In this document: piece by piece, positions 3,840-59,048 of the stretch | Layout: each line of letters starts with the position of its first letter | Position numbering within the stretch: position 1 is the stretch's first letter | NCBI RefSeq assembly: GCF_030028105.1 | Contig: NC_092372.1 | Span: forward strand, 64,794,034-64,858,033 | Length of the DNA stretch: 64,000 bases | Direction of reading: 5' to 3' | DNA from: Mobula birostris | Lineage: Eukaryota | Notes under the pieces: generated by a model | What the model saw: only the letters and a program-made list of their open reading frames with translations | Told to the model about the DNA's origin: nothing | Database searches by the model: none | Translations under genes and position numbers: made by a program

Positions 3840-4422
3840 TATTTGGCCGTCAGAGTCCGTAGATTGGGAGATTGCTTCACTGCGCACCTACACTCTGTCT
3901 GCCAGAAAATGGGGGATCTCCCATCGGTCACACATTTTAATTCCACTTCCCATTCCCATTCCGATATGTCCATCCATAGCCTCCTCCACTGTCGCGATGA
4001 TGCCACACTTAGGTTGGAGGAACAACACCTCATATTCCGTTTGGGTAGCTTTCAGCCTGATGACATGAACATGAATTTCTCAAACTTCCAGTAATGGCCC
4101 CCAGACCACCTCTCCTTCACCATTTCTCATCCCCTTTTCCCTCTCTCACCTCATCTCCTTGCCTGCCCATCGCCTCCCTCTTTTCTTTCTTCCATGGTCT
4201 TCTATCTCTTTCACCAATGAACTTCCCAGCTCTTTACTTCATCCCTTCCCATTCATGTTTCACCTATCACCTTGTGTAGCTGTCTCCCCTCCCCCCACCT
4301 TATAAATCTGCTCCTTAGCTATTTTTCTCCCATCCTGCCAAAGGGTTCAGCCTGAAACATCGACTGTACTCTTTTCCATAGATGCTGCCTGGCTTTCTGA
4401 GTTCCTCCAACATTTTGTGTGA
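3840..4422 (+). mobile_element. Penelope-like element 3' fragment (GIY-YIG endonuclease C-terminus, pyrimidine-rich UTR, decayed hammerhead)
   Basis: ORF 3792..4094 RRLGDCFTAHLHSV...HFNSTSHSHSDM...RLEEQHLIFRLGSFQPDDMN matches the PLE GIY-YIG end; decayed ribozyme catcctgccaaagggttcagcctgaaacatcgactg at ~4331-4366. Confidence 0.85.
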
Positions 4423-5643: not shown

Positions 5644-6589
5644 TCACAGTCATAGTCATAGTCATACTTTATTAATCCCGGGGGAAATTGGTTTTCGTTA
5701 CAGTTGTTCCATAAATAATAAATAGTAATACAACCATAAATAGTTAAATAGTAATATGTAAATTATGCCAGTAAATTATGAAATAAGTCCAGGACCAGCC
5801 TATTGGCTCAGGGTGTCTGACCCTCCAAGGGAGGAGTTGTAAAGTTTGATGGCCACAGGCAGGAATGACTTCCTATGACGCTCTGTGTTGCATCTCGGTG
5901 GAATGAGTCTCTGGCTGAATGTACTCCTGTGCCCACCCAGCACATTATGTAGTGGATGGGAGACATTGACCAAGATGGCATGCAACTTAGACAGCATCCT
6001 CTTTTCAGACACCACCGTCAGAGAGTCCAGCTCCATCCCCATAACATCACTGACCTTACGAATGAGTTTGTTGATTCTGTTGGTGTCTGCCACCCTCAGC
6101 CTGCTGCCCCAGCACACAACAGCAAACATGATAGCACTGGCCACCACAGACTCATAGAGCATCTTCAGCATCGTCCGGCAGATGTTAAAGGACCTCAGTC
6201 TCCTCAGGAAATAGGGACGGATCTGACCCTTCTTGTAGACAGCCTCAGTGTTCTTTGACCAGTCCAGTTTATTGTCAATTCGTATCCCCAGGTATTTGTA
6301 ATCCTCCACCATGTCCACACTGACCCCCTGGATGGAAACAGGAGTCACCGGTACCTTAGTTCTCCTCAGGTCTACCACCAGCTCCTTAGTCTTTTTCACA
6401 TTAAGCTGCAGATAATTCTGCTCACACCATGTGACAAAGTTTCCTATCGTAGCCCTGTACTCAGCCTCATCTCCCTTGCTGATGCATCCAACTATGGCAG
6501 AGTTATCTGAAAACTTCTGAAGATGACAAGACTCTCTGCTGTAGTTGAAGTCCGAGGTGTAAATGGTGAAGAGAAAGGGAGACAAGACA
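5644..6589 (-). mobile_element. 5'-truncated young Rex1/Babar LINE
   Basis: RT C-terminal ORF, AT-rich 3' UTR, (catagt)n tail at the left end, possible TSD gactag at 5638-5643 and 6590-6595. Confidence 0.92.
5800..6585 (-). pseudogene. Rex1/Babar reverse transcriptase C-terminal part (261 aa open frame)
   Basis: LSPFLFTIYTSD...KFSDN (catalytic xDD changed to DN)...LNVKKTKELVVD...YKYLG...TERHRKSFLPVAIKLYN. Confidence 0.9.
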
Positions 6590-7649: not shown

Positions 7650-7905
7650 TGCACACCAAAACGCACAAAACTTTGAAGGAACTCAGTAAGTCAGACAGCA
7701 TCTATGGAAGGGAATAAGCAGTCAACATTTTGGGTTGTGAGCCTTCATCAGGACTGAAAAGGAAGGGATCAGAAGCCAGGATCATAAGTCAGGATCATGT
7801 TGACCATTTATTTCCCTCCATAATTGCTGTCTGACTTGCTGAGTTCCTCCAGCATTTAGTGTGTGTTGCTCAAGATTTCCAGCACCTTCAGAATTTCTTG
7901 TATTT
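7650..7905. mobile_element. Penelope-derived fold-back element with decayed hammerhead (minus strand, 7719-7756)
   Basis: Inverted arms ~7661-7727 and ~7797-7866; reverse complement of 7719-7756 is cagtcCTGATGAaggctcacaacccAAAATgttgactg. Confidence 0.8.
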
Positions 7906-8129
7906 ATGGGTTCCATGCCAAGATCAGACTCCCATAACTTCAAGGCTCCACTGAAAATTTTAGAACAAATCACTTGTGGGTTCAAGATCTGCTCTAAGTA
8001 TCTAATAACAAAATATAGGCTAACGTTTCAGTTCAGCTCACTGATATTGGCTTATATTCTGTTTGGATAGCCTCAAACCTAATGGTATGAACATCGATTT
8101 CTCAAACATCTGATAATACCCCCCCCCTC

Positions 8130-10165: not shown

Positions 10166-10851
10166 GAGAGGAGAAGATGGCGATGCGATGCAGCTCGCAG
10201 CGGCCACTCCGGTGGTGATGTCTTATTTGTCAAGTAGGGTGCCGTGCACAATCCTGATTTGATGGAGACGGATATGAGAGCACAGAGGAATATCTGGTGA
10301 AACTTCTGAAATGCCTGCTTCGCTACTGCTGCTACTGTGTGGTCCAGAATCTCCGGAGGGGAAGGCCCCAAATCCTTGGCTTTGCTTGTTGCTCGGCGGC
10401 CGGGGTGGGGTCGAAGCGCTCGGCAGAGGATGGTGCTCGGACAGGCTGTGTCGAAGGGCTGGTTGGAGACTCGAAGTTTTCAGACGGACTCAGAGTCCAC
10501 TGCGGTCGGGTGCTTCCAATGGTGCTGCATCAGCAAGTTTGCGGCGCTTGGAGGTTCATAGCTGGAAGAGTTCCTCTCTTCTGCCGCCTGCGTGAGACGA
10601 TGAGTCTATCGGGACTTTGAGACTTTTTTTTCCCGTGCCCATGGTCTGCTCTTTATCAAATTATGGTATTGCTTTGCACTGTTGTAACTATATGTTATAA
10701 TTATGTGGTTTTGTCAGTTTTAGTCTTGGTTTGTCCTGTGTTTCTTGTGATATCACTCTGGAGGAACATTATATCATTTTTTAAAGCATGCATTTCTAAA
10801 TGACAACAAATGAGGACTGAGTGTCCTCATAATCTAATCTAATCTAATCTA
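10166..10851 (+). mobile_element. Non-coding ~690-bp retroelement (AAGATGGCG head, 3' hairpin, (TAATC)n tail), copy 1
   Basis: 10-bp TSD atcctctatt at 10156-10165 and 10852-10861; hairpin atgaggac-tgagt-gtcctcat at 10810-10830; three further copies in the window. Confidence 0.9.
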
Positions 10852-11137
10852 ATCCTCTATTCCAGACACCCCAGTAAGCATCTCCTGAACCCTATCCAGT
10901 CGCCAGGGGCAATCAGAAACACACACAGTACTACAAGTATGGTCTGACTGCACTTTTATATAGCGACAGCCTGACTTCCTCAGTCTTACACTCATCATGC
11001 CAATTAAATCAGGCATTTTTTATGTTTTCTTTACTACCTTATCCATACATAGCCACTTTCAGTGAACTATGGACCTGAATCTCAAGATCCTTCTGTATAT
11101 CGGTGCTATTAAGGAGCCTATCATTAACTGTCAACTG

Positions 11138-11270
11138 AACACAAAAGATTCTACAGTTGCTGGAAATCTTGAGCAACACGCAAAATGCTGGAGAAACTCA
11201 GCAAGTCGGTCAGTATCTAGGGAGGGGAATAAATAGTTGACTTTCTGGGCTGAGATATTTAACAGTACTC
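11138..11270 (-). mobile_element. Single arm of the Penelope-derived fold-back family
   Basis: acacaaaagattctacagttgctggaaatcttgagcaacacgcaaaatgctggagaaactcagc matches the arms at 55165 and 58621. Confidence 0.75.
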
Positions 11271-20128: not shown

Positions 20129-20970
20129 GAGCTTAATGTGAAAAAAACTAAGGAGCTGGTGGTAGACCTGAGGAGAGCTAAGGTACCGGTGACCCCTGTT
20201 TCCATCCAGGGGGTCAGTGTGGACATGGTGGAGGATTACAAATACCTGGGGGTACGAATTGACAATAAACTGGACTGGTCTAAGAACACTGAGGCTGTCT
20301 ACAAGAAGGGTCAGAGCCGTCTCTATTTCTTGAAGAGACTGAGGTCCTTTAACATCTGCCGGACGATGCTGAGGATGTTCTGCGAGTCTGTGGTGGCCAG
20401 TGCTATTATGTTTGCTGTTGTGTGTTGGGGCAGCAGGCAGAGGGTGGCAAACACCAACAGAATCAACAAGCTCATTCGCAAGGCCAGTGATGTTGTGGGG
20501 ATGGAACTGGACTCTCTGATGGCGGTGTCTGAAAAGAGGATGCTGTCTAAGTTGCATGCCATCTTGGTCAATGTCTCCCATCCACTACATAATGTACTGG
20601 GTGGGCACAGGAGTACATTCAGCCAGAGACTCATTCCTCTGAGATGCAGCACAGAGCGTCATAGGAAGTCATTCCTACCTGTGGCCATCAAACTTTACAA
20701 CTCCTCCCTTGGAGGGTCAGACATCCTGAGCCGATAGGCTGGTCCTGGACTTATTTCATAATTTACTGACATAATTTAAATATTACTATTTAACTATTTA
20801 TTACTATTTTTCTATTACTATTCTATTACTATTTATTATCTCCATGACTATTACTATTTACTAATAGTAGTATTACTATTACTATTTCTATTACTATTTA
20901 TTATTTATGGTGCAACTGTAATGAAAACCAATTTCCCCTGGGATCAGTAAAGTATGACTGTGACTATGAC
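20129..20970 (+). mobile_element. 5'-truncated young Rex1/Babar LINE, same family as 5644-6589
   Basis: ORF 20138..20737 differs from the 5800..6585 product at about 18 of ~199 residues by my count; expanded (tattactatt)-like UTR; (tatgac)n tail. Confidence 0.92.
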
Positions 20971-26333: not shown

Positions 26334-26547
26334 NNNNNNNNNNNNNNNNNNNNNNNNNNNNNNNNNNNNNNNNNNNNNNNNNNNNNNNNNNNNNNNNNNN
26401 NNNNNNNNNNNNNNNNNNNNNNNNNNNNNNNNNNNNNNNNNNNNNNNNNNNNNNNNNNNNNNNNNNNNNNNNNNNNNNNNNNNNNNNNNNNNNNNNNNNN
26501 NNNNNNNNNNNNNNNNNNNNNNNNNNNNNNNNNNNNNNNNNNNNNNN
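26334..26547. other. Assembly gap (214 N)
   Basis: Run of n characters. Confidence 1.
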
Positions 26548-39239: not shown

Positions 39240-39560
39240 ATCATCTCTCTCTCTCACCCTTTCTCCTCTTTTCTCCTGCCTGTCGCCTCCCTTTGTTGCT
39301 CCTCATCTCTTTCTCCCATGGTTCAATGTCCTCTCCTATCAGATTCCTTTTTCTTTAGCCCTTGAACTCTTTGACCTATCACCTGCCAGCTTCTTACTTC
39401 ATCCCCTCTTCTCCTTCATCTACTTTCACAAGCCACCTGCTGGCTTGTACATTCCCCCCTCCCCCATCTTCTTACTCTGGTTTCTGCCCCTTCCTTTTCA
39501 GTCCTGATAATTAGTATTGGTCCAAAACATTGACTGTTTATACTCCTCCAGAGAGGTTGC
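39240..39560 (+). mobile_element. Penelope-like 3' UTR with decayed hammerhead (39499-39536)
   Basis: Pyrimidine-rich UTR like 4100-4330 and 50830-51120; cagtcCTGATAAttagtattggtccAAAACattgactg keeps the cagtc/gactg stem I. Confidence 0.75.
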
Positions 39561-40844
39561 CTCCAGGAGGTTGTGATGCTTCGAATACAGAATTCAGTTT
39601 GCTATCAGTTAACTCAGAGGTAATTCATCTAAATACAGAGGTAGTTCAACCCCATCCATATTGAATATAAACAAATGTAGCAGAGAAATCTTTAAATGTT
39701 TAAGAGTATTGTTTAGTCCATAGCTTAGTAATGTTACCTCTAAATTTGAGCACCACAATGCTTTTTTACTAGCCATCCTGCCTTCACTTGTTATGAGTTT
39801 AAGCCCTTCAAAACTAGTTGCCTTTAAATAATCATGCATAAAATTGTGATTACCCATCATGCCTCTCACTGGCAACCATGCCTCAGATTAAAATGCTGAC
39901 ACTTCTTTTTAAATATTATCTTGTCTTTGATTCTCTCAACCTCTTCAGGAATTCACTGTACTTCACTTTCCCCTGACCCTTCTGGATTGTATAAAATCTT
40001 TCATGTATGCTCTACAACCTAAAGAGGTCTCCTTGAGTTCCTCCTTAAATCCTTCCATTATTCTCTCTTAGTGTGAAGGGAATTTTACACTGTAAGTTTT
40101 CCAATTCACCTACTTTAAAATAATTTTATGTCTATATTCCCAATAAATAAATAACTAAAAGGGCTGACACCAAGAATTTATTGACCTGTGCCTTTAATGT
40201 ATGCCAGGAAAAGTGCGAATTGGAAAACTGCTCCCAATCTCAATAACTGAATAAATTAAACAAAGTAGAAATTATAACTAAGAAAATCTTCAGTCTTATA
40301 GTTGTAATAGTTCAATTAACCTTTGATATGTTTTATCTAAATATCCTTCTCTGTTTGCTATCAATTGCTCTTTAGTGTTTTTTTTATCTTATACATTATG
40401 ATTGCAAGCCTGGTTCATATCTTTTCATTCAGCTGTTATAACTAATTTGTATGATCATTATTCCTTTCATAATCATATTAATGCAATAAATGAATAATAT
40501 TTTTGCACCATTCTAATTTAAGTAATTGTGAGCACTATGATTAAGATTTCAAACTATATGCTGTAGTTCGAGCCGTGTTATCCAAAAGAAATGATGTCAT
40601 AAGTTCAATATCCTTGGACTAGTACAGTTGCCCTGATGCAACAGCTGTACTTAATAAGTGTATAAATAATCTTCATCATTAATTTTTTCTTGTTCTCTTA
40701 AGCAACTAAAAATACTATGAATTGATTTGTTTATGTATTTCATCACCTGAAACATATATAAAACAACCCAATTTCAGTATCTGTTCTTGAAGCTGTAATG
40801 GTGGAGGAGGTTCCTTAATGTTGTTATAGCCAAGCATGGTAATG

Positions 40845-47940: not shown

Positions 47941-49054
47941 TTGTGAATTCCCTGATCTTATCTTTACATCCTTGTATTACTACCCCAGCATCATGTTAGT
48001 GGAACAGACTGTCACACACCATTGCGAACTGGAAATATATCACTGCCATTCATTGGTGTTGCTTTTACATCTTGGAACTTCCTACCCAATGGCATAGTGG
48101 AACAGCTTCATCGGAAGGTAGCACCAGTTCAATAAGGTGGTTCAACATAACCTTGTTAAGGGCATTTAGTGAGAGGCAACACAGTCTGCTTTTGCCACTG
48201 ATGGTATCCCTCTGAAAAATCAATAAATGAAGAAAAATTCTGCCCTTGTGATATCTCCGAATTTCTAGCCTTGCTTAGAGGACTGCTAGTAAAAAGGATC
48301 ATTTACATGAGCGTTCTAAAATTTATTAATTGTTCCATGTCAAATGCATCTTTTGGCACAATTAATCTGATTAAAATTGTTTTTATGTCATAAAACTCTG
48401 TCATAAATTTGTCAAACGAAATTAACAAACTGACATGTTGAGTAATTGTGGAAAATATTAAAGACATGCATAAATTGCAGGATATTACAGATCAGATACT
48501 ATTAATCAACAGAATATGAGTGAAGATTTCAGGATACATTTTCATCCAGGTGTCAGCAGAAAGTGTAAATGCCAGTTGGCAGATTGAAATTTATTTTTGT
48601 TTATTAATTAATTTCCAGAGTCTTCCCGACAAGGAGGCTAGTAAAAATTAAGGCAAGAAGAGTATAATAAAGCTGAGATTACAATTAATCTTATTCTATT
48701 AAATCTTTAACAAGTAAAGCTTTCCTGTACATTGCACCTGAGTATCAGCAACAAAATAACCTTCATGGCAAAATGCTTGGAGAAAACATCAAAAACGCTT
48801 GACAAAGAGGTAAGTTCCGATAAGTAATGAGAGAATGGCAGAGATGCAGCATGGTTTAGGGAAGGAATTCCTGAACCTTGGGTCCTGACGTCTGAAGGCA
48901 CAACTTTCATTAGTGGAGTTATTAAGTTTGTAAATCAGATCAGAATCAGGTTTAATATCACCAGCATATGTTGTGAAATCTGTTGTCTGCAAAACATAAT
49001 AACAGAAAATAAAACTGTGAATTACAGTAAGTAAATATAAATATATATATGTAT

Positions 49055-49305
49055 TGTAGTCGCGTGGAAATCCGCTACTAAAGAAACATACGGAGGCAGA
49101 GAGAGCTGAACTCAGAATGCCTTTATTGATTCAACATCATGTGCTTAAATCTCCCCTCCCATGGGTCCCTGTGATCCGCGGGGCGGACGTGACATCAGAC
49201 TGTCCCAGGAAGGTCCACCCCGAGCGGGTAGCTCCAAACGCGCTACCGCGTGTCTGCCCGCGGCTCCCAATGGCGTTTCAAGTCCCATGTGTGCGGGCCG
49301 CAACA
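49055..49305 (-). mobile_element. 3' LTR (251 bp) of a Ty3/Gypsy element
   Basis: TG...CA ends (tgtag/caaca), AATAAA on the minus strand at 49123-49128, adjacent polypurine tract at 49306-49319. Confidence 0.85.
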
Positions 49306-50390
49306 CCATCCACTCCCCTCAGAAACGTGCATCGGGGGAGTGGAGCCCCCAGTCTGTGTGGCTTGCCTGGGTGGCCAGCCTCGCCCGCATGGTGCGGGTA
49401 CCCTCACTGGTTGCTCAATGTCCAAGCGCGCCAGTTTGAGACGGTCCACTGTAAAAGTCTCTTCCCGGCCACCCACCTCCACGACACACGTGGTTCCATT
49501 ATGCCGGATCACCTTGAAGGGTCCCTCGTACGGCCGCTGTAGAGGTGACCTGTGCATGCCCCTGCGAATAAAAACATACTCACAGTCTCGGAGGTCTTTA
49601 GGGGTGAAGGATGGTGTGGGACCATGCCTGGAGGTCGGGACCGGTGCCAGGGTCCCTACCTTGTCCCGCAGCCTCGTTAGCACCGTTGCTGGAGTTTCTT
49701 CCGAACCTTGGGCCTCTGGTACGAACTCGCCTGGGACCGTCAGGGAGGTGCCGTAGACCAGTTCCGCCAAGGAGGTGTCCAGGTCCTCCTTGGGGGCTGT
49801 GCGGATGCCCAGTAGGACCCAGGGAAGCTCATCTGTCCAGTTGGGGATGCTGAGGCGCGCCATCAGGGCCGACGAGATGCCGGTGAAATCGCTCCACCAA
49901 ACCATTGGACTGGGGATGGTATGCTGTGGTGTGATGCAGCTGGGTGCCCAGGAGCTGCGCCAGTGCTGTCCACAAACCAGATGTGAACTGCTCCCCTCTG
50001 TCGGAGGTGACGTCCGTTGGGAGGTCGAACCTGGTGATCCAGTTTGCAATGAGCGTCCTGTCACAGGACTCAGTGGATGTGTCTGCAAGCAGTACGGCTT
50101 CCGACCATCTGGTGAACCTGTCTACCATGTTAAAGGTATACCTGGCAGGGGGCCGATGATGTCCATGTGGATGTATTGGAACCTCCTGTGCATCGGCTGG
50201 AACTGCTGGAGGGGAGCCTTCATGTGCTGCTGGGCTTTGGCGGTCTGGCAGTGTACACAGGTCCTGGCCCAGTGTTCGACCTGTTTGCACAAATCGTGCC
50301 AGATGAATCTGTCCACTACCAGCTTGATGGACACCCGGATGGATGGGTGGGCCAGGTCCTGCAGCGTGTCGAACACCCGGCGCTTCCATG
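49306..50390 (-). pseudogene. Ty3/Gypsy integrase (frameshifted, 5' truncated)
   Basis: Zinc-binding AHPSIR..WARTCVHCQTAK; core MVDRFTRWSEA..TSDRGEQFTS..TTAYHPQSNGLVERFHR; C-terminal LQRPYEGPFKVI (GPF), spread over three frames. Confidence 0.92.
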
Positions 50391-51130
50391 CAGATTGCTC
50401 CTTCTGTAATTCCCTTGCCTATTCACCCTTCCCCACTCATCTCCCTGCTGGCGCTTATCCCTGCATGTGAAAGAAGTGCATTAACCTCCTCCCTCACCTC
50501 CATTCAGGGCACCAAACAGTACTTAATGGTGAGACAACCTGTAAACTTTGTTCAGGTCAAATTCTGTATCCAATGCTCCTGATGTGGCCTCCTCTATATT
50601 GGTGAGACCCGACATAGATTGTGGGACCACACCTTCGCTCTATCCACATAAAGCAGGATTTCCCAGTGGCCAACCACTTTAATTTCAATCCTCATTCCCA
50701 TTCCAACATGTCAGTCCATCGACTCCACTGCTGCCATGACGTGCCACTCTTAGTTTGGAGGAGCAACACCTCATATTCCACTTGATTAGACTACAACCTG
50801 ATAGCATGAACAACAATTTCTACAACTTCTGGTAATTTTTCCCCCTTCCCATTCACTTTTCTTCAACTTCCCACTCTGACCCCATTCTTACCTCTTCTCG
50901 TCTCCTCTCCTGCTATCACCTTCCCCTGGTGCTCCTCCTCCATTCCTTTATCTGATGGTCCACTCTCCTGTACTATCAGATTCCTTCTTTTCCAGCCCTT
51001 TACTTATTCCACCTATCACCTCTCAGCTTCTCACTTCATTCTTCCCGTCCACCAACCCGGATTCTCCTTCTAGCTTGTTCCCCTTCCATTCCGCCCACCT
51101 TTGTATTCTGGCTTCTTCCCCTGATGAAGG
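50390..51130 (+). mobile_element. Penelope-like element 3' fragment (GIY-YIG domain and UTR, ending in the hammerhead half CTGATGAAGG)
   Basis: FCIQCS*CGLLYIGETRHRL; HFNFNPHSHSNM; LEEQHLIF; homologous to 3840-4422. Confidence 0.85.
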
Positions 51131-53471: not shown

Positions 53472-53640
53472 TCCCCTTCCCCCCTCCCCCCTCCCCCTTC
53501 CCCCTTCCCCCTCCCCTTTCCCCCCTTTCCCCCCTCCCCTTACCCCTCCCCTTCCCCTTCTCCCTCTCCCTCCCCTTCCCCCTCTCCCTCTCCATCCCCT
53601 TCCCCCTTCCCTCCCCCACTCCCTCCCCTTTCCCCTTCCA
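53472..53640. repeat. C/T-rich low-complexity tract ((cccctt/ccctct)n)
   Basis: About 170 nt almost purely pyrimidine. Confidence 0.95.
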
Positions 53641-54069
53641 TCGGAAGCCTTTCCCTGAAGCCTTTGCCTGCAACGTCACCTGCGTCTTCGCCTGTATCGC
53701 TGTCAAGTTCTACCGCCAGAGCAAGCCTTGCTGTGTCTAGATAAGAAATTGTCTATCGTTGTTTGGAACTGTCTCTGTGTCCACGCCTTCGGTAGGTAGG
53801 TCTGGCCATTTGCCGCTACCTTGTGTTGGGAAACATCTCGTCGTGTTCAGCATTCTGTGTATGAGTCCCGGCTCTACATCCTGTTCCCAAGGAGTTGTCC
53901 CGGCTCTGTGCCTGTGTATGATTCCTGGCCCTACGTCCTGCACCCAAGGAGGGGTCCAGGCTCTGTGTTCCATGTTCCTGTCGCTCAAGTTCAAGGCTCC
54001 GTGTTCCCATGCTCTCGACCAAGGCTCTGAGTGTCCAGTCCTCGTCCAAGGCTCCAAGGTTCCTGTCTC

Positions 54070-54202
54070 CCAGGACCACAGCTCTGTGTTCCACTGCTGC
54101 CAAGACCACAGCTCTGTGTTCTGGTGCTCCCAAGACCAAATCTCTGTATTCTGGTGCTGCCAAGACCAAGTCTCTGAGTTCCTGTTCTCCCAAGACCAAG
54201 TC
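54070..54202. repeat. 30-bp minisatellite x4.4 inside the solo LTR
   Basis: ccaagaccacagctctgtgttctggtgctc-like units at 54070, 54100, 54130, 54160 and 54190. Confidence 0.9.
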
Positions 54203-55164
54203 AAGGCCCTGTGTTCTCACCCAGCCCAGGAGTACCTCGTCCTGCCCAGGAAAGCCTTTAAAAGTCCAAGGCTCGTCCAGTCCTGTAGCCACGCCTCGAA
54301 GAACTCAAGTCATGCCCAGTCCTATTGCCACGTTATGTCCTCGCCTAGTTCCGAGGTCCAAGGCCGAGTCAAGTCCTGGGTTCTGGGTCCTTGTCCAGTC
54401 TCTGGCTGGGAGTCCTAGCCCAGGCTCTGTATCCTGGTCTCATCCAAGGCCTGTGTCAATGTCCAGTATCATTTCTTCCCCACTTCCCTTGCTTTCTTGA
54501 CACTCCAAGTCTTGTTCCTAGTACTTCAGTGTCTGCGTCTTGCATTTGGGTCCTCTCCCAATGCCCCCCTTATGACAGGAATAGATATTTCCCACCTGTT
54601 GCAACAGTCCATTGCTGGACTCCATATGAATTCCATCTGAATCTATTTCTGGGATTCATTTACATTAATGGTGAATAACCACTGAGGTCGTGCACTAAGT
54701 CAGAACCAGCACTGGGATTGGATTGCTTCCGTTTTAATAACATTTTACATATGCAACTTTGAAGATAATAGAAAAGGTAAATTAAATTTTTATTTGCTTA
54801 TTCGAACGTTTTATTCCAAAATGGTTTTGTATTTTGAATTTACTTTTTTAATATAAATTTGTATACATTTTTTATAGTTATTAAAATAGTTTTTATAGTT
54901 TTATAGTTTTATAGTTCTTGGAGTGGGAGCTCTGCAGCTCAGGCATAGTTACCACTGTTACATCACCTTGATGATTGCTGATGATCTTCAAGACCAGCCG
55001 CCTGAATCTGGCCCCAGACAGTTCAGGTGAGCAGGCTAAGATGTGGGTAGGGGTTCTCTGTGCTGAGCCAGATCTAGCACAATCCAGCTTGAGCATTACC
55101 AGAAAATGAAGGCAAGGTCTGGTTTCAACATTATCCAAAGGAGAAGAAATATGCAGACAAGCAT

Positions 55165-55368
55165 AAACACAGGAGATTCTGCGGAAGCTAGAACTCCAGA
55201 GCTGCACACACAGAATGCTGGAGGAATTCAACAGCATCTATTGAAATCAATAAACAGTTGATGTTTCATGCTAAGTCCTGATGAAGGGCCTCAGCCCGAA
55301 ACGTTGACTGTTTATTCATTTCCATAGATGCTGCCTGACGTGCTGAGTTCCTTCAACATTTTGTGTGT
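55165..55368. mobile_element. Penelope-derived fold-back element
   Basis: Arms acacacagaatgctggaggaattca..gcatctattgaaatcaataaacagttgatgtttc and gaaacgttgactgtttattcatttccatagatgc..tgagttccttcaacattttgtgtgt. Confidence 0.85.
55274..55309 (+). ncRNA. Minimal type I hammerhead ribozyme motif
   Basis: AGTC-CTGATGA-A-GGGC(CTCA)GCCC-GAA-ACGT-T-GACT: stem I AGTC/GACT, intact core, 4-bp stem II, loopless palindromic stem III, GUU cleavage triplet. Confidence 0.8.
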
Positions 55369-56489
55369 CATGTTCTAAGGTAAGCATGTAGCATCTATAG
55401 CAAATGATGAAAATATTTTGTTTGGTGTGTTTGTCCTTTTCAAATAAACTTATTTAAGTGTTGTAATGCAAAATCTTGATTCCATTAACACAAACTAGAT
55501 AGGAAATCAGCATGGCTGCTACATCACACCACCACTGATCCATTTTCTAATAACAACAGATAGACTTTCCTTCAGAATTCTTTAGGAGTTCTTATAATGC
55601 TGATTCAATTTTCTTTATCCTGCTAAAGCATTGCAATTGCTAAGCCAATGCAATGAATTTTACTCAGATGCATAAGATAGTTGTTGACCTATGCAGATGA
55701 TGATTCATAGATACTGCATTCCAAATTAAAATGATTGCAACGGTCGGAAATCTTCTGATTTATTAGAAATGATCTTGAAAAAAAATTGATTTCAATAAAT
55801 GCATGTAGAAAAATATCACTACTTCTCCTTCATCCATCATGAACTCAGCCTCCAAATACTTCAGAATCGGTTCTTTTTATATAAAGGTATATTTTGATTC
55901 CTGAGGCTTTCTCGGTCTCGCCGACTTAAGCAACACATCTTCTGTTGCCTGGCAACAATACCTAATTTTGCTAAGGGGAAACTGCATACTTGTTCTATTA
56001 ATATGTTCATGGCTCAATTCCAATTAAAGATTACTATTATGTTTTCTGTGACCTTACAATTTGTGCTTACTTGAGTCATTCCTTAAAAAAAGACTACTGA
56101 GTACACAAGCCAATAGTGAACCTTAAGCACAAAATATCACTGATCACGTAATAACATCATAGGAAGAGTGTCATTACTGACGTCATTTATACCAAATCAG
56201 TAAGTAAACTCTACAGAATACACATGGTACAAAAATGAAACTGAATGTTAATACAGATCGACAGACTAATATAGTAGGTACTAACTTGGGAGAACGGGTT
56301 AAAATCTATGCTTCATAATATGAAAAAAATATACTTTTCTGTGATATTATGCCAACTAAAAAACTCCTTTGATTAAAATGAACCGAGTTTCCTCCTCAGA
56401 TTTGACCTCTCAATTAACTACTTTGAAAATTAGTATCTTTCCCTGGGATCAAGAATATCGTACAGGATGCGATGTTATTATAACAACAA

Positions 56490-57994: not shown

Positions 57995-58095
57995 GCAACA
58001 CACACAGAATGCTGGAGGAACTCAGCAAGTCAGGCAGCATCTATAGAAATGAATAGGCAGTCAAAGTTTTGAACTAAGACTGTTTATCAGGACGT
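57995..58095 (-). mobile_element. Single arm of the Penelope-derived fold-back family with decayed hammerhead
   Basis: acacacagaatgctggaggaactcagcaagtcaggcagcatctat..cagtcaaagttttg..ttatcaggac. Confidence 0.75.
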
Positions 58096-58370
58096 GATGA
58101 CCCATTGCACCTGCAAGTTAATTTTTTGTGATTCATGCACAAGCACTGTCAAGTCTCTCTGCACAGCAGCATGTTGCTGCAATCTTGCACCATTTAAAGT
58201 GGATGGCCTTGCACTTGCCAATGTTGTGTTCCATCAGCCAGAGCCTTTCCCACTTACTTAGTCCATCGATATCACTCTGAAAACTGTATAATTTGCTTTT
58301 CACTCAAGACAGTGAATTTAGCAGACTTAGATATGTTACACTCAGTCCCCTCATCCAAATTTTCAATATA

Positions 58371-59048
58371 CCTCCAGTGGCCACTTACTAGGTTAGATGT
58401 GTTTCTCTTCTGAACACCGCTGTCGTAAAGCAGACCACTGTTAATTGAGTTACTGTTGCCTTTCTGTCAGCTTGAACCTGTCTAGCTATTCTCCTCTAAC
58501 CTCCCTCATTAACAAGGTGTTTTTGCCCACAGAACTCCCATTCACTGGATGTTATTTTGTTTTTCGCACTGTTCTCTGAAAACTCTAGAGACTGTTATGT
58601 GTGAAAACCCCAGGAGATCATAAACAAGAAAATAACTACAGATGCTGGAAATCTGAACAACACACACAAAGTGCTGGAGGAGCTCAGCAGGCCAGGCAGC
58701 ATCAATGGAAAAATGTACAGCTGATGTTGAAATGTCGGCTGTGCTTTTTTCCATAGCTGCTGCCTGGCCTGTTGACTTCCTCCAGCATATTGTACGTGTT
58801 ACCTCAGGAGATCAGCAGTTTCTGAGATAACTCAAACTATCCCATCTGTCACCAGTAATCATTCCACAGTCAAAATTACTGAGATCACATTTCTTCCCCA
58901 TTCTGATGTCTGGTCCAAACAACAACTGAATTTCTTCACCATGTCTGCATGCTTTTATGCACTGAGTTGCTGCCACATGATTAGCTGATAAGATGTTTGC
59001 ATTAACGAGCAGGTTTACAGGTGTACCTAATAAAGTAGCCACTGGGTG
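58371..59048 (-). mobile_element. Internally deleted Tc1 transposon
   Basis: Imperfect TIRs cctccagtggccacttactaggt and acctaataaagtagccactgggtg; transposase N-terminus MGKKCDLSNFDCGMI.. then DLLGFSHITVSRVFREQCEKQ, split by an insertion. Confidence 0.85.
58621..58804. mobile_element. Penelope-derived fold-back element inserted in Tc1
   Basis: Near-perfect hairpin centred at ~58728; 10-bp TSD caggagatca at 58611-58620 and 58805-58814. Confidence 0.9.

What the first reader, a model, noticed from the sequence alone, without database searches (positions are those of the whole stretch)
55274..55309. Near-intact minimal hammerhead ribozyme in a short non-coding mobile element
Seen: AGTC CTGATGA A GGGC-CTCA-GCCC GAA ACGT T GACT. 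All conserved core nucleotides are present (CUGAnGA, GAA, A15.1-U16.1, H17), with one extra A before a perfect 4-bp stem II and a closing stem I. Stem III is the loopless palindrome ACGU. Established: Penelope-like elements carry minimal type I hammerheads in their pLTRs, and short palindromic stem III forms cleave mainly as dimers. Inference: this copy could still self-cleave (GUU here; the copy at ~4360 keeps C at that position), and it could cut a host transcript if transcribed on the + strand.
Basis: partly seen in the sequence, partly recalled or inferred. Interest (0 to 1): 0.8.

Follow-up and report, generated by a model that had tools for sequence, protein, structure and literature searches.

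The report
Fossil Penelope-type hammerhead in fold-back repeat
The hammerhead-ribozyme motif is really there, but it is an ordinary relic of a very abundant Penelope-type retroelement end, and in this copy it is locked inside a long hairpin and is unlikely to cut anything.

Summary
The 36-nt motif at 55274-55309 reads exactly as described. It is the only match in the window to a minimal-hammerhead descriptor, and 0 to 5 of 200 shuffles give any match. It is not a free-standing element. It is the 5' end of the + arm of a 207-bp fold-back (55162-55368) made of two inverted, 5'-truncated copies of a repeat. That repeat piles up to roughly 10^4-10^5 copy-equivalents in contigs of two species.

The motif shows the features published for Penelope-like-element (PLE) minimal hammerheads: an extra nucleotide after A9, a G10.1-C11.1 pair, a palindromic loopless helix III and a 4-bp helix I. 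The insertions show PLE signatures: inverted truncated copies, and a ~43-bp tail on one arm only in 3 of 3 fold-backs.

Activity of this copy is unlikely. The fold-back (-93.6 kcal/mol, z -9.45) leaves the ribozyme stems at probability 0.0001 or less. No partner hammerhead lies nearby. RNA-guess contigs do not cover the locus. No Rfam hammerhead model matches. Only 1 of 6 window copies keeps the full core.

First-stage notes already flag this kind on other pieces of the same genome. It is a known kind and of low interest.

The parts
55162..55368 (.). Whole fold-back insertion: two inverted, 5'-truncated copies of one retroelement end, joined head to head
   Evidence: Self-inverted blastn match 55206-55368. 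RNA fold -93.6 kcal/mol, z -9.45, 0 of 200 shuffles as good. Repeat depth rises within bin 55104-55170 and falls after 55371. Unique contigs of X1 and X5 abut or enter both sides (table 8).
55274..55309 (+). Minimal type I hammerhead motif (helix I 55274-55277/55306-55309; core 55278-55284; extra A 55285; helix II 55286-55289/55294-55297; GAA 55298-55300; ACGU 55301-55304; U17 55305). Predicted cut between 55305 and 55306.
   Evidence: Sequence; descriptor scan and shuffles.
55274..55368 (+). Right arm: + strand copy, 5'-truncated exactly at helix I, ending at the TGTGTGT run without the tail
   Evidence: 82-84% identical to other window copies. Family contigs run on unlike the window before 55274 (1963 loose ends in X1) and behind 55368 (2023 in X1) (table 7).
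55206..55273 (-). Left arm: - strand copy of the same end, 5'-truncated around helix II/GAAAC, with a 9-nt deletion and no CUGAUGA box
   Evidence: Arm-to-arm alignment: 55 identical, 9 transitions, 3 transversions, 9 gap columns.
55162..55205 (-). ~44-bp 3' extension ('tail') present on the left arm only
   Evidence: related tails on 7800+, 11250- and 58700-, absent from the five other copy ends. Family contigs continue past 55368 where this + arm stops. PLE tail described.
4333..4421 (+). Solo family copy with a longer 5' part (upstream C/T-rich sequence), decayed core (A6>C, G8>A), C17 at 4361, no tail
7658..7908 (.). Second fold-back of the family: the - arm 7658-7775 carries the hammerhead region (core intact but G12>A, helix II broken). 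The + arm, about 7780-7908, carries the tail.
11135..11270 (-). Solo family copy with tail and decayed core (A6>T, G8>A, G12>A, A13>G)
39493..39562 (+). Partial family copy, decayed core (G8>A, G12>A)
58000..58099 (-). Solo family copy, no tail, decayed core (G8>A, G12>A)
58619..58793 (.). Third fold-back of the family. Both arms are truncated near GAAA, so there is no hammerhead box. The tail is on the - arm only (about 58619-58660).
   Evidence: Sub-threshold miRNA-like Rfam hits at 58692-58767.

Best explanation
The motif is a fossil of a Penelope-like-element (PLE) type minimal hammerhead. The parent is a very abundant retroelement, or a non-autonomous derivative moved by a PLE. Its RNA carries a dimer-dependent type I hammerhead about 63 nt upstream of the place where most copies end.

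Reverse transcription from that end, followed by early stalling, leaves short 5'-truncated copies that still contain the hammerhead. PLE-style integration often adds a second, inverted truncated copy and a ~43-bp tail on one side only. The unit 55162-55368 is such a product: the - arm has the tail but no hammerhead box, and the + arm begins exactly at helix I.

The insertion is old. It is shared with a second species, and its arms have diverged. It is decaying neutrally, mainly by CpG transitions; the U at position 17 is one of these (CG to TG).

Shown here: the motif, the family, the fold-back, the asymmetric tail, the shared insertion and the decay of sister copies. Inferred: the PLE parentage, since no RT/GIY-YIG ORF is linked to any copy in this window; and the inactivity of this copy, because the hairpin sequesters helix I 3', G12-A14 and helix III, and no partner hammerhead is available.
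For: Motif and chance.

[quoted passage not shown] Helix I of 4-5 bp is also as described (PMC4209133, main text parts 1-2 read). That paper also reports pairs of minimal hammerheads on opposite strands 100-700 bp apart, and mostly single, truncated copies.

PLE insertion signatures: an inverted 5'-truncated copy and a 30-40-bp tail often at one end only (PMC8557442, passages). The tail is explained by two internal reverse-transcription start sites that, from the distances the paper gives, lie about 85-92 nt downstream of the hammerhead cut site (PMC11167929, passages). Here 3 of 3 fold-backs have the tail on one arm only. Copies end 63 nt (no tail) or about 107 nt (with tail) after the predicted cut.

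Abundance: summed contig depth is 9.8 million (55305-55371) and 1.6 million (55238-55304) against about 49 on the flanks in X1. Ratios are similar in X5.

Shared insertion: X5 contigs 31 (54891-55302, 6 other letters) and 32 (55345-56300, 17 other letters).

Decay: 1 of 6 copies keeps the full core. Window CpG observed/expected is 0.275.

Inactivity.
Against: - No PLE protein is linked to any copy. Pfam on 72 of the 78 ORFs of 80 aa or more gave RVT_1 (2 ORFs), rve/Integrase (LTR type) and PF09004 (LINE type), but no GIY-YIG. PLE parentage therefore rests on architecture alone.
- Helix II is 4 bp, shorter than the 6-8 bp described for Schistosoma and Drosophila PLE hammerheads.
- No covariation beyond chance among the 6 copies: 76.1% of cells paired against 72.8% in shuffles, and 26 of 500 shuffles were as high.
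- No Rfam hammerhead hit.
- Thermodynamic folding does not exclude a co-transcriptional or protein-assisted ribozyme fold.
- Contigs cannot show RNA ends, so cleavage in vivo is untested.
- 68 further difference rows were not shown, so family conservation of each core base cannot be read from that call.
Confidence: 0.82

Rival explanations
1. The copy is a working ribozyme. When transcribed on the + strand it self-cleaves after U17, alone or by pairing with another family transcript, and so cuts a host RNA.
For: All core nucleotides are present, H17 is not G, and helices I and II are perfect. Family copies are present in contigs of a run guessed to be RNA (X22). PLE hammerheads can cleave with protein help.
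Against: The fold-back out-competes the ribozyme fold by 16 kcal/mol, and helices I and II have probability 0.0001 or less. Even the 95-nt + arm alone does not fold into helices I and II at minimum energy. Helix III needs a second hammerhead, and none that is intact lies on the + strand in 64 kb. The double-hammerhead pairing is 5.7 kcal/mol above the dimer MFE. Depth is zero on the unique flanks in X21 and X22. Published activity of such motifs is low even as dimers. No RNA-seq ends were found at the cut site of the lizard Poseidon PLE (PAc).
Confidence: 0.05
2. The family is not PLE-derived. It would be a SINE or a fold-back DNA element (MITE) whose hammerhead-like string is an accident of its sequence.
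For: No PLE ORF lies next to any of the 10 copy arms in the window. The hairpin shape resembles MITEs and gives sub-threshold miRNA-precursor hits. There is no covariation.
Against: Solo, non-inverted copies with variable 5' truncation and a fixed 3' end (4333-4421, 11135-11270, 58000-58099) indicate retroposition, not cut-and-paste. The two arms are unequal, with a tail on one arm only. The motif carries three PLE-specific extras that a chance core would not need. I saw no target-site duplication at 55162/55368 on reading.
Confidence: 0.08
3. The functional unit is the hairpin, not the ribozyme. Transcribed fold-backs of this family would be processed into small RNAs (hairpin siRNA or miRNA-like).
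For: A very stable ~60-bp-arm hairpin, z -9.45. Rfam miRNA-precursor models align end to end at 37 and 32 bits.
Against: Those scores are far below gathering (140 and 51). No RNA evidence exists for the locus. The arms are decaying like neutral DNA, 82% identical with a 9-nt deletion. No small-RNA data were available.
Confidence: 0.04

Closest known systems
Minimal hammerheads (min-HHR) of metazoan Penelope-like elements (Cervera & de la Pena 2014, PMC4209133)
   Same: Type I topology, loopless palindromic helix III implying dimers, an unpaired nucleotide between A9 and G10.1, a G10.1-C11.1 pair, helix I of 4 bp. Mostly single truncated genomic copies, some as opposite-strand pairs. Massive copy number in non-mammalian vertebrates.
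   Different: Helix II here is 4 bp, against 6-8 bp in the Schistosoma and Drosophila examples. No pLTR-ORF-pLTR unit is linked to it in this window. Whether this particular family was ever catalogued could not be checked.
Poseidon PLE of Anolis carolinensis (PAc), hammerhead plus internal RT start sites and 'tail' (PMC11167929)
   Same: A hammerhead lies a short distance upstream of the element's insertion end. An optional ~30-40-bp tail lies between two alternative ends. Hammerhead activity is dispensable for insertion in vitro. This fits the finding that 4 of 5 decayed copies here share G8>A.
   Different: Distances differ: 63 and ~107 nt here, against about 85-92 nt in PAc as I compute it from the paper's figures. 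The end here is a TG run, not the described AC-rich stem-loop. No protein is available here.
Non-LTR retrozymes (tandem hammerhead repeats giving circRNAs; PMC7229834 seen in listing only; preprint 10.64898/2026.07.22.740005, abstract and Results part 1 read)
   Same: Type I hammerheads related to PLE terminal repeats. Found in one sampled cartilaginous fish and most non-mammalian, non-avian vertebrates. Rare head-to-tail joints of the 95-nt unit exist elsewhere in this genome (table 5).
   Different: This locus is an inverted pair, not a tandem, so it cannot yield a unit-length RNA by double cleavage.
Rfam Hammerhead families (type I, II, III, HH9, HH10)
   Same: Same catalytic core letters.
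   Different: No match at any threshold tried. Why the models miss it was not examined.

Membership tests
Hammerhead ribozyme (catalytic core) | C3 U4 G5 A6 N7 G8 A9 box | tested here: met
   CTGATGA at 55278-55284.
Hammerhead ribozyme (catalytic core) | G12 A13 A14, then an A15.1-U16.1 pair and H17 that is not G | tested here: met
   GAA 55298-55300, A 55301, T 55304, T 55305. That U17 is permitted is recalled knowledge (the NUH rule), not a call.
Hammerhead ribozyme (catalytic core) | Helices I and II flanking the core | tested here: met
   Both are 4 bp and perfect in isolation. In the fold-back context their pairing probability is 0.0001 or less.
Hammerhead ribozyme (catalytic core) | Helix III formed within one molecule | tested here: not met
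   ACGU has no loop and can pair only with a second copy.
Hammerhead ribozyme (catalytic core) | Self-cleavage at H17 | not testable with these tools
   All runs served were contigs, which cannot show RNA ends.
Rfam hammerhead models | Covariance-model score at or above gathering | tested here: not met
   0 matches at gathering. No hammerhead among 5 matches at E<=10 on 601 nt, nor among 4 at E<=1 on 64 kb.
PLE minimal hammerhead | Unpaired nucleotide between 9 and 10.1; G10.1-C11.1; palindromic 15.2-16.2; helix I of 4-5 bp | tested here: met
   A 55285; G 55286 with C 55297; C 55302 with G 55303; AGTC/GACT. Criteria taken.
PLE minimal hammerhead | Lies in the terminal repeat of an element encoding RT plus GIY-YIG endonuclease | tested here: inconclusive
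   No GIY-YIG among 72 of 78 ORFs of 80 aa or more. RVT_1 in 2 ORFs whose positions were not reported. Only truncated copies occur in 64 kb.
PLE minimal hammerhead | PLE insertion signatures: inverted 5'-truncated copy; 30-40-bp tail at one end only | tested here: met
   3 of 3 fold-backs have the tail on one arm only. Criteria taken.
PLE minimal hammerhead | Families show compensatory changes in the helices | tested here: inconclusive
   6 copies: 1 pair changed on both sides, and 240 of 500 shuffles do as well. The covariation score was reached by 76 of 500 shuffles.
Non-LTR retrozyme | Head-to-tail tandem of hammerhead-bearing units | tested here: not met
   This locus is an inverted pair. 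Tandem joints were seen only in 3 contigs from elsewhere.
miRNA precursor (MIR6140, mir-31) | Rfam gathering score | tested here: not met
   37.2 bits against 140; 32.1 against 51.

The most novel reading that the evidence does not exclude
PLE fold-backs may act as masked ribozymes or hairpin-RNA genes. The inverted arm would keep the hammerhead core exposed in the apical loop while sequestering its 3' half. The RNA would then be either a substrate for small-RNA processing that silences the ~10^5-copy family, or a switch that cleaves only when the hairpin is unwound, for example by the PLE protein. The recurrent break of the inverted arm near helix II/GAAAC in 3 of 3 fold-backs would then reflect a mechanism tied to the ribozyme, not chance.
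Probability: 0.05. Interest if true: 0.45.

Novelty: new member of a known kind. Interest (0 to 1): 0.15.

Why it matters
It matters little on its own. The finding is one more decayed copy of a class described in 2014. It has some use for annotation. The motif, the fixed 3' end at the TG run and the optional ~43-bp tail give a clean signature for masking a family that makes up a visible share of this genome. They also explain many hairpin-like and 'miRNA-like' false positives. The shared G8>A in 4 of 5 decayed copies hints that copies with a dead core still amplified. That agrees with the in vitro finding that the hammerhead is dispensable for PLE insertion.

Tried and rejected
**Rfam.** Three searches gave no hammerhead. 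I do not read this as evidence against the motif; why the models miss it was not examined.

**Alignment.** (A2) used wrong start coordinates for two copies and was discarded. (A3) replaces it.

**Covariation.** One search had only 6 copies and is uninformative. More copies could not be fetched, because no tool here serves this genome beyond the window, and read laying returns tables, not sequences.

**PLE protein.** Pfam covered 10 ORFs plus 62 ORFs, out of 78 ORFs of 80 aa or more.
- Left out: 2 ORFs that run across the N gap at 26334-26547.
- Left out: 4 overlapping ORFs (10311-10595, 49161-49439, 49611-49853, 50167-50409).
- No GIY-YIG was found.
- ORFs under 80 aa were not scanned, so a decayed PLE ORF could be missed.

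**Host gene and strand.** Not determined. The GC-rich block at 49.0-50.5 kb looked like a possible first exon, but it translates like an LTR-retroelement integrase C-terminus (the resemblance is recalled, and Pfam found nothing for that ORF). I ran no further search on it.

**Expression.**
- None of the 24 listed runs is on record as RNA.
- The two RNA-guess runs laid cover only the repeats, and one of them is marked 'probably DNA'.
- Absence of expression is therefore not shown.

**Taxon.** Not determined by any tool. From recall only, the repeat tail resembles abundant repeats of cartilaginous fishes. I did not use this.

**Literature.**
- combined hammerhead ribozyme and Penelope with four cartilaginous-fish words, with at least 3 of the 6 terms required. 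Its 15 listed papers all had 0 occurrences of 'hammerhead ribozyme', so I found no paper on such motifs in those fishes. 1,904 papers matched and only 15 were listed.
- Lunse et al. (RNA Biol) was seen only as a reference and in a summarising passage of PMC6765202. The paper itself is not held.
- Supplements of PMC4209133, which hold the vertebrate hammerhead alignments, were closed and may already contain this family.

**Family conservation from reads.** Table 3 lists only 55289 (C here, T in about 94% of depth) and 55340 inside the + arm. 68 rows were not shown, so I make no claim for the other positions.

Full report
**1.

One search shows 55274-55309 as AGTC CTGATGA A GGGC CTCA GCCC GAA ACGT T GACT.
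- helix I of 4 bp;
- the CUGAUGA box;
- one extra A;
- a perfect 4-bp helix II closed by CUCA;
- GAA;
- the loopless palindrome ACGU, which supplies A15.1 and U16.1;
- U at position 17;
- the closing strand of helix I.

The predicted scissile bond lies between 55305 and 55306. The sister copy near 4360 has C at that position (4361).

I wrote a minimal-hammerhead descriptor and ran it on both strands of the window. This locus is the only match under all three stringencies. Among 200 dinucleotide-preserving shuffles, a match appeared in 0 (strict), 2 (relaxed) or 5 (most relaxed). No Rfam hammerhead model matches at any threshold tried. Why the models miss it was not examined.

**2. What surrounds it**

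The Rfam run at a lax threshold aligned the whole of 55208-55366, on both strands, to a plant miRNA-precursor model far below its cut-off (37 bits against 140). That is a symptom of a long inverted repeat.

Self-blast confirms this. The stretch matches its own reverse complement, and it matches eight other places in the window.

Taken together, searches give ten copy arms of one repeat family in 64 kb:
- three head-to-head pairs (55162-55368, 7658-7908, 58619-58793);
- four solo copies (4333-4421 +, 11135-11270 -, 39493-39562 +, 58000-58099 -).

The hammerhead sits at the very 5' end of the + arm of the first pair. The - arm starts around helix II/GAAAC and has no CUGAUGA box. The arms are 82% identical in aligned columns (55 identical, 9 transitions, 3 transversions) and the left arm has a 9-nt deletion.

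**3. The family is huge and is shared by two species**

I laid contigs of four coded runs on 54300-56300 at 80% likeness.
- The unique flanks have a summed depth of about 49 (X1) and about 11 (X5).
- The bin 55305-55371 reaches 9.8 million (X1) and 2.7 million (X5).
- The hammerhead bin 55238-55304 reaches 1.6 million (X1) and 0.41 million (X5).

The tool warns that this is not a copy number. As an order of magnitude, it points to 10^4-10^5 copy-equivalents.

Family contigs run on unlike the window before 55274 (1963 loose ends in X1) and behind 55368 (2023). This copy is therefore truncated at both places relative to longer members.

Inside the + arm the table lists only two positions where most of the family differs: 55289 (C here, T in about 94% of depth, which turns a U.G into a C-G pair in helix II) and 55340. 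Sixty-eight rows were not shown, so nothing can be said about the other positions.

Contigs of the second species (X5 records 31 and 32) run from unique flank into both edges of the unit, with 6 other letters (54891-55302) and 17 other letters (55345-56300). The insertion therefore predates the split of the two species and changes at about the rate of its flanks.

**4. Why I read it as Penelope-type**

The 2014 survey of PLE hammerheads (PMC4209133, main text parts 1-2 read) lists features that emerged without being part of its search descriptor:
- a conserved G10.1-C11.1 pair;
- palindromic 15.2-16.2.

All three are present here. The 4-bp helix I also matches the short helix I (4-5 bp) that the paper describes for Schistosoma min-HHR families. 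The same paper reports that most genomic motifs are single and truncated, and that some lie as pairs on opposite strands 100-700 bp apart.

Craig et al. (PMC8557442, passages) describe PLE insertions as highly 5'-truncated. They often have an inverted truncated copy directly adjacent, and a 30-40-bp tail that is often present at one end only.

Frangieh et al. (PMC11167929, passages) explain the tail by two internal reverse-transcription start sites shortly downstream of the hammerhead.

In this window, 3 of 3 fold-backs carry a ~43-bp extension on one arm only. One solo copy has it and two solo copies lack it. Copies end 63 nt after the predicted cut without the tail, or about 107 nt after it with the tail.

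Solo copies have a fixed 3' end and a variable 5' end. This argues for retroposition rather than a cut-and-paste fold-back element.

**5. What is missing for membership**

No PLE protein is linked to any copy. Pfam on 72 of the 78 ORFs of 80 aa or more found:
- PF09004 in two ORFs (LINE type);
- RVT_1 in two ORFs;
- LTR-type integrase domains;
- no GIY-YIG.

Two ORFs across the N gap and four overlapping ones were left out, and shorter ORFs were not scanned. Parentage is therefore inferred from architecture. Helix II (4 bp) is shorter than in the published invertebrate examples.

**6. Will this copy cut?**

Probably not, for five reasons.
- As RNA, the unit folds into a hairpin of -93.6 kcal/mol (z -9.45, 0 of 200 shuffles as good).
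  - In that fold CUGAUGA lies in the apical loop.
  - GAAACGUUGACUG pairs with the left arm.
  - Enforcing helices I and II with an open core costs 16 kcal/mol (-84.0 to -67.8 for 55200-55375).
  - Their ensemble probability is 0.0001 or less, in 76-nt, 159-nt and 176-nt contexts.
- The 95-nt + arm alone also prefers another fold.
- Helix III needs a second hammerhead.
  - The other five copies that cover the region all have core changes.
  - For two isolated 36-mers, the double-hammerhead pairing scores -17.5 kcal/mol, against -23.2 for the dimer MFE and -20.4 for two separate monomers.
- Runs X21 and X22, guessed to be RNA, give zero depth on the unique flanks. They are small, one is probably DNA, and contigs cannot show ends, so this is weak evidence.
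- Published work reports very low activity for such motifs even as dimers. For the lizard Poseidon PLE (PAc), it reports cleavage only with the element's protein and no RNA-seq ends at the cut site.

**7. Decay**

Only 1 of the 6 copies covering the region has the full core.
- G12>A occurs in 4 copies. It sits in a CpG, and the window's CpG observed/expected ratio is 0.275.
- U17 in this copy is the CG-to-TG product of the C17-G1.1 step kept at 4361.
- G8>A occurs in 4 of the 5 decayed copies and is not at a CpG. This suggests a subfamily that spread with a dead core.

Pair counts on the six copies show no covariation beyond chance. With so few copies, this decides nothing.

**8. Comparison and novelty**

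The closest known thing is the metazoan PLE minimal hammerhead. The locus works like one and meets its motif-level and insertion-level criteria. Linkage to a PLE ORF is untested here.

It is not a retrozyme at this locus, because the copies are inverted, not tandem. Three contigs from elsewhere do show head-to-tail joints of the 95-nt unit.

A 2026 preprint (abstract and Results part 1 read) already reports hammerhead retrozymes and PLEs across non-mammalian, non-avian vertebrates, including one cartilaginous fish.

First-stage notes of this scan flag the same kind of hammerhead on other pieces of this genome. These notes are unchecked and do not count as support.

I could not check whether this exact family is catalogued, because supplements were closed and no repeat library was on hand.

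**Verdict**

This is a genuine but ordinary relic. It is a new member of a known kind and is of low interest.

Noticed in passing
window 55162-55205, about 7866-7908, about 58619-58660, about 11135-11176: A ~42-44-bp extension follows the TG-run end of the family. It is present on exactly one arm of each of the 3 fold-backs and on 1 of 3 solo copies whose 3' end I read. It looks like the PLE 'tail' signature.
   Followed up: partly
window 4333-4421, 11135-11270, 39493-39562, 58000-58099: 4 of 5 decayed hammerhead copies share G8>A at a non-CpG site. A subfamily with an inactive core may have amplified.
   Followed up: no
window 55274/55368 (joints in contigs from elsewhere in the genome): Joints that 'go back 95' (55368 to 55274, three letters between) occur in 2 contigs of X1 and 1 of X5. 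Several 'opposite strands' joints also occur. So tandem and further fold-back arrangements of the unit exist elsewhere (table 5).
   Followed up: no
window 54300-54580: A second very high-copy repeat, with summed contig depth up to 1.17 million in X1 and also present in X5, X21 and X22. Its identity was not examined.
   Followed up: no
window 53472-54199: A C/T-rich microsatellite (53472-53636) and minisatellites of period 57, 27 and 30/60 (53855-54199) lie in a GC-rich block.
   Followed up: no
window 49000-50500: A GC-rich block (55-61% GC) has long ORFs on both strands. ORF 49243-50088 (-) reads like the C-terminal part of an LTR-retroelement integrase (recalled resemblance; no Pfam hit for it). 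rve and Integrase_H2C2 hit one unidentified ORF of the window. I observed only.
   Followed up: partly
window 5800-6585 (-) and 20138-20737 (+): ORFs with PF09004 (E 5e-10 and 6e-9). From recall, this domain is typical of the region after the RT of CR1/jockey-type LINEs.
   Followed up: no
window 58692-58767: The hammerhead-less fold-back of the same family gives sub-threshold matches to mir-31 and mir-2131 precursor models (32.1 and 30.7 bits). This shows how these fold-backs mimic miRNA hairpins.
   Followed up: partly
window 55281-55307: The AUG inside CUGAUGA opens a short frame that stops at TGA 55305-55307, created by the C17-to-U change. In the lizard Poseidon PLE (PAc) the ORF starts at helix II of the hammerhead. 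The geometry is similar, but no long ORF follows here.
   Followed up: no
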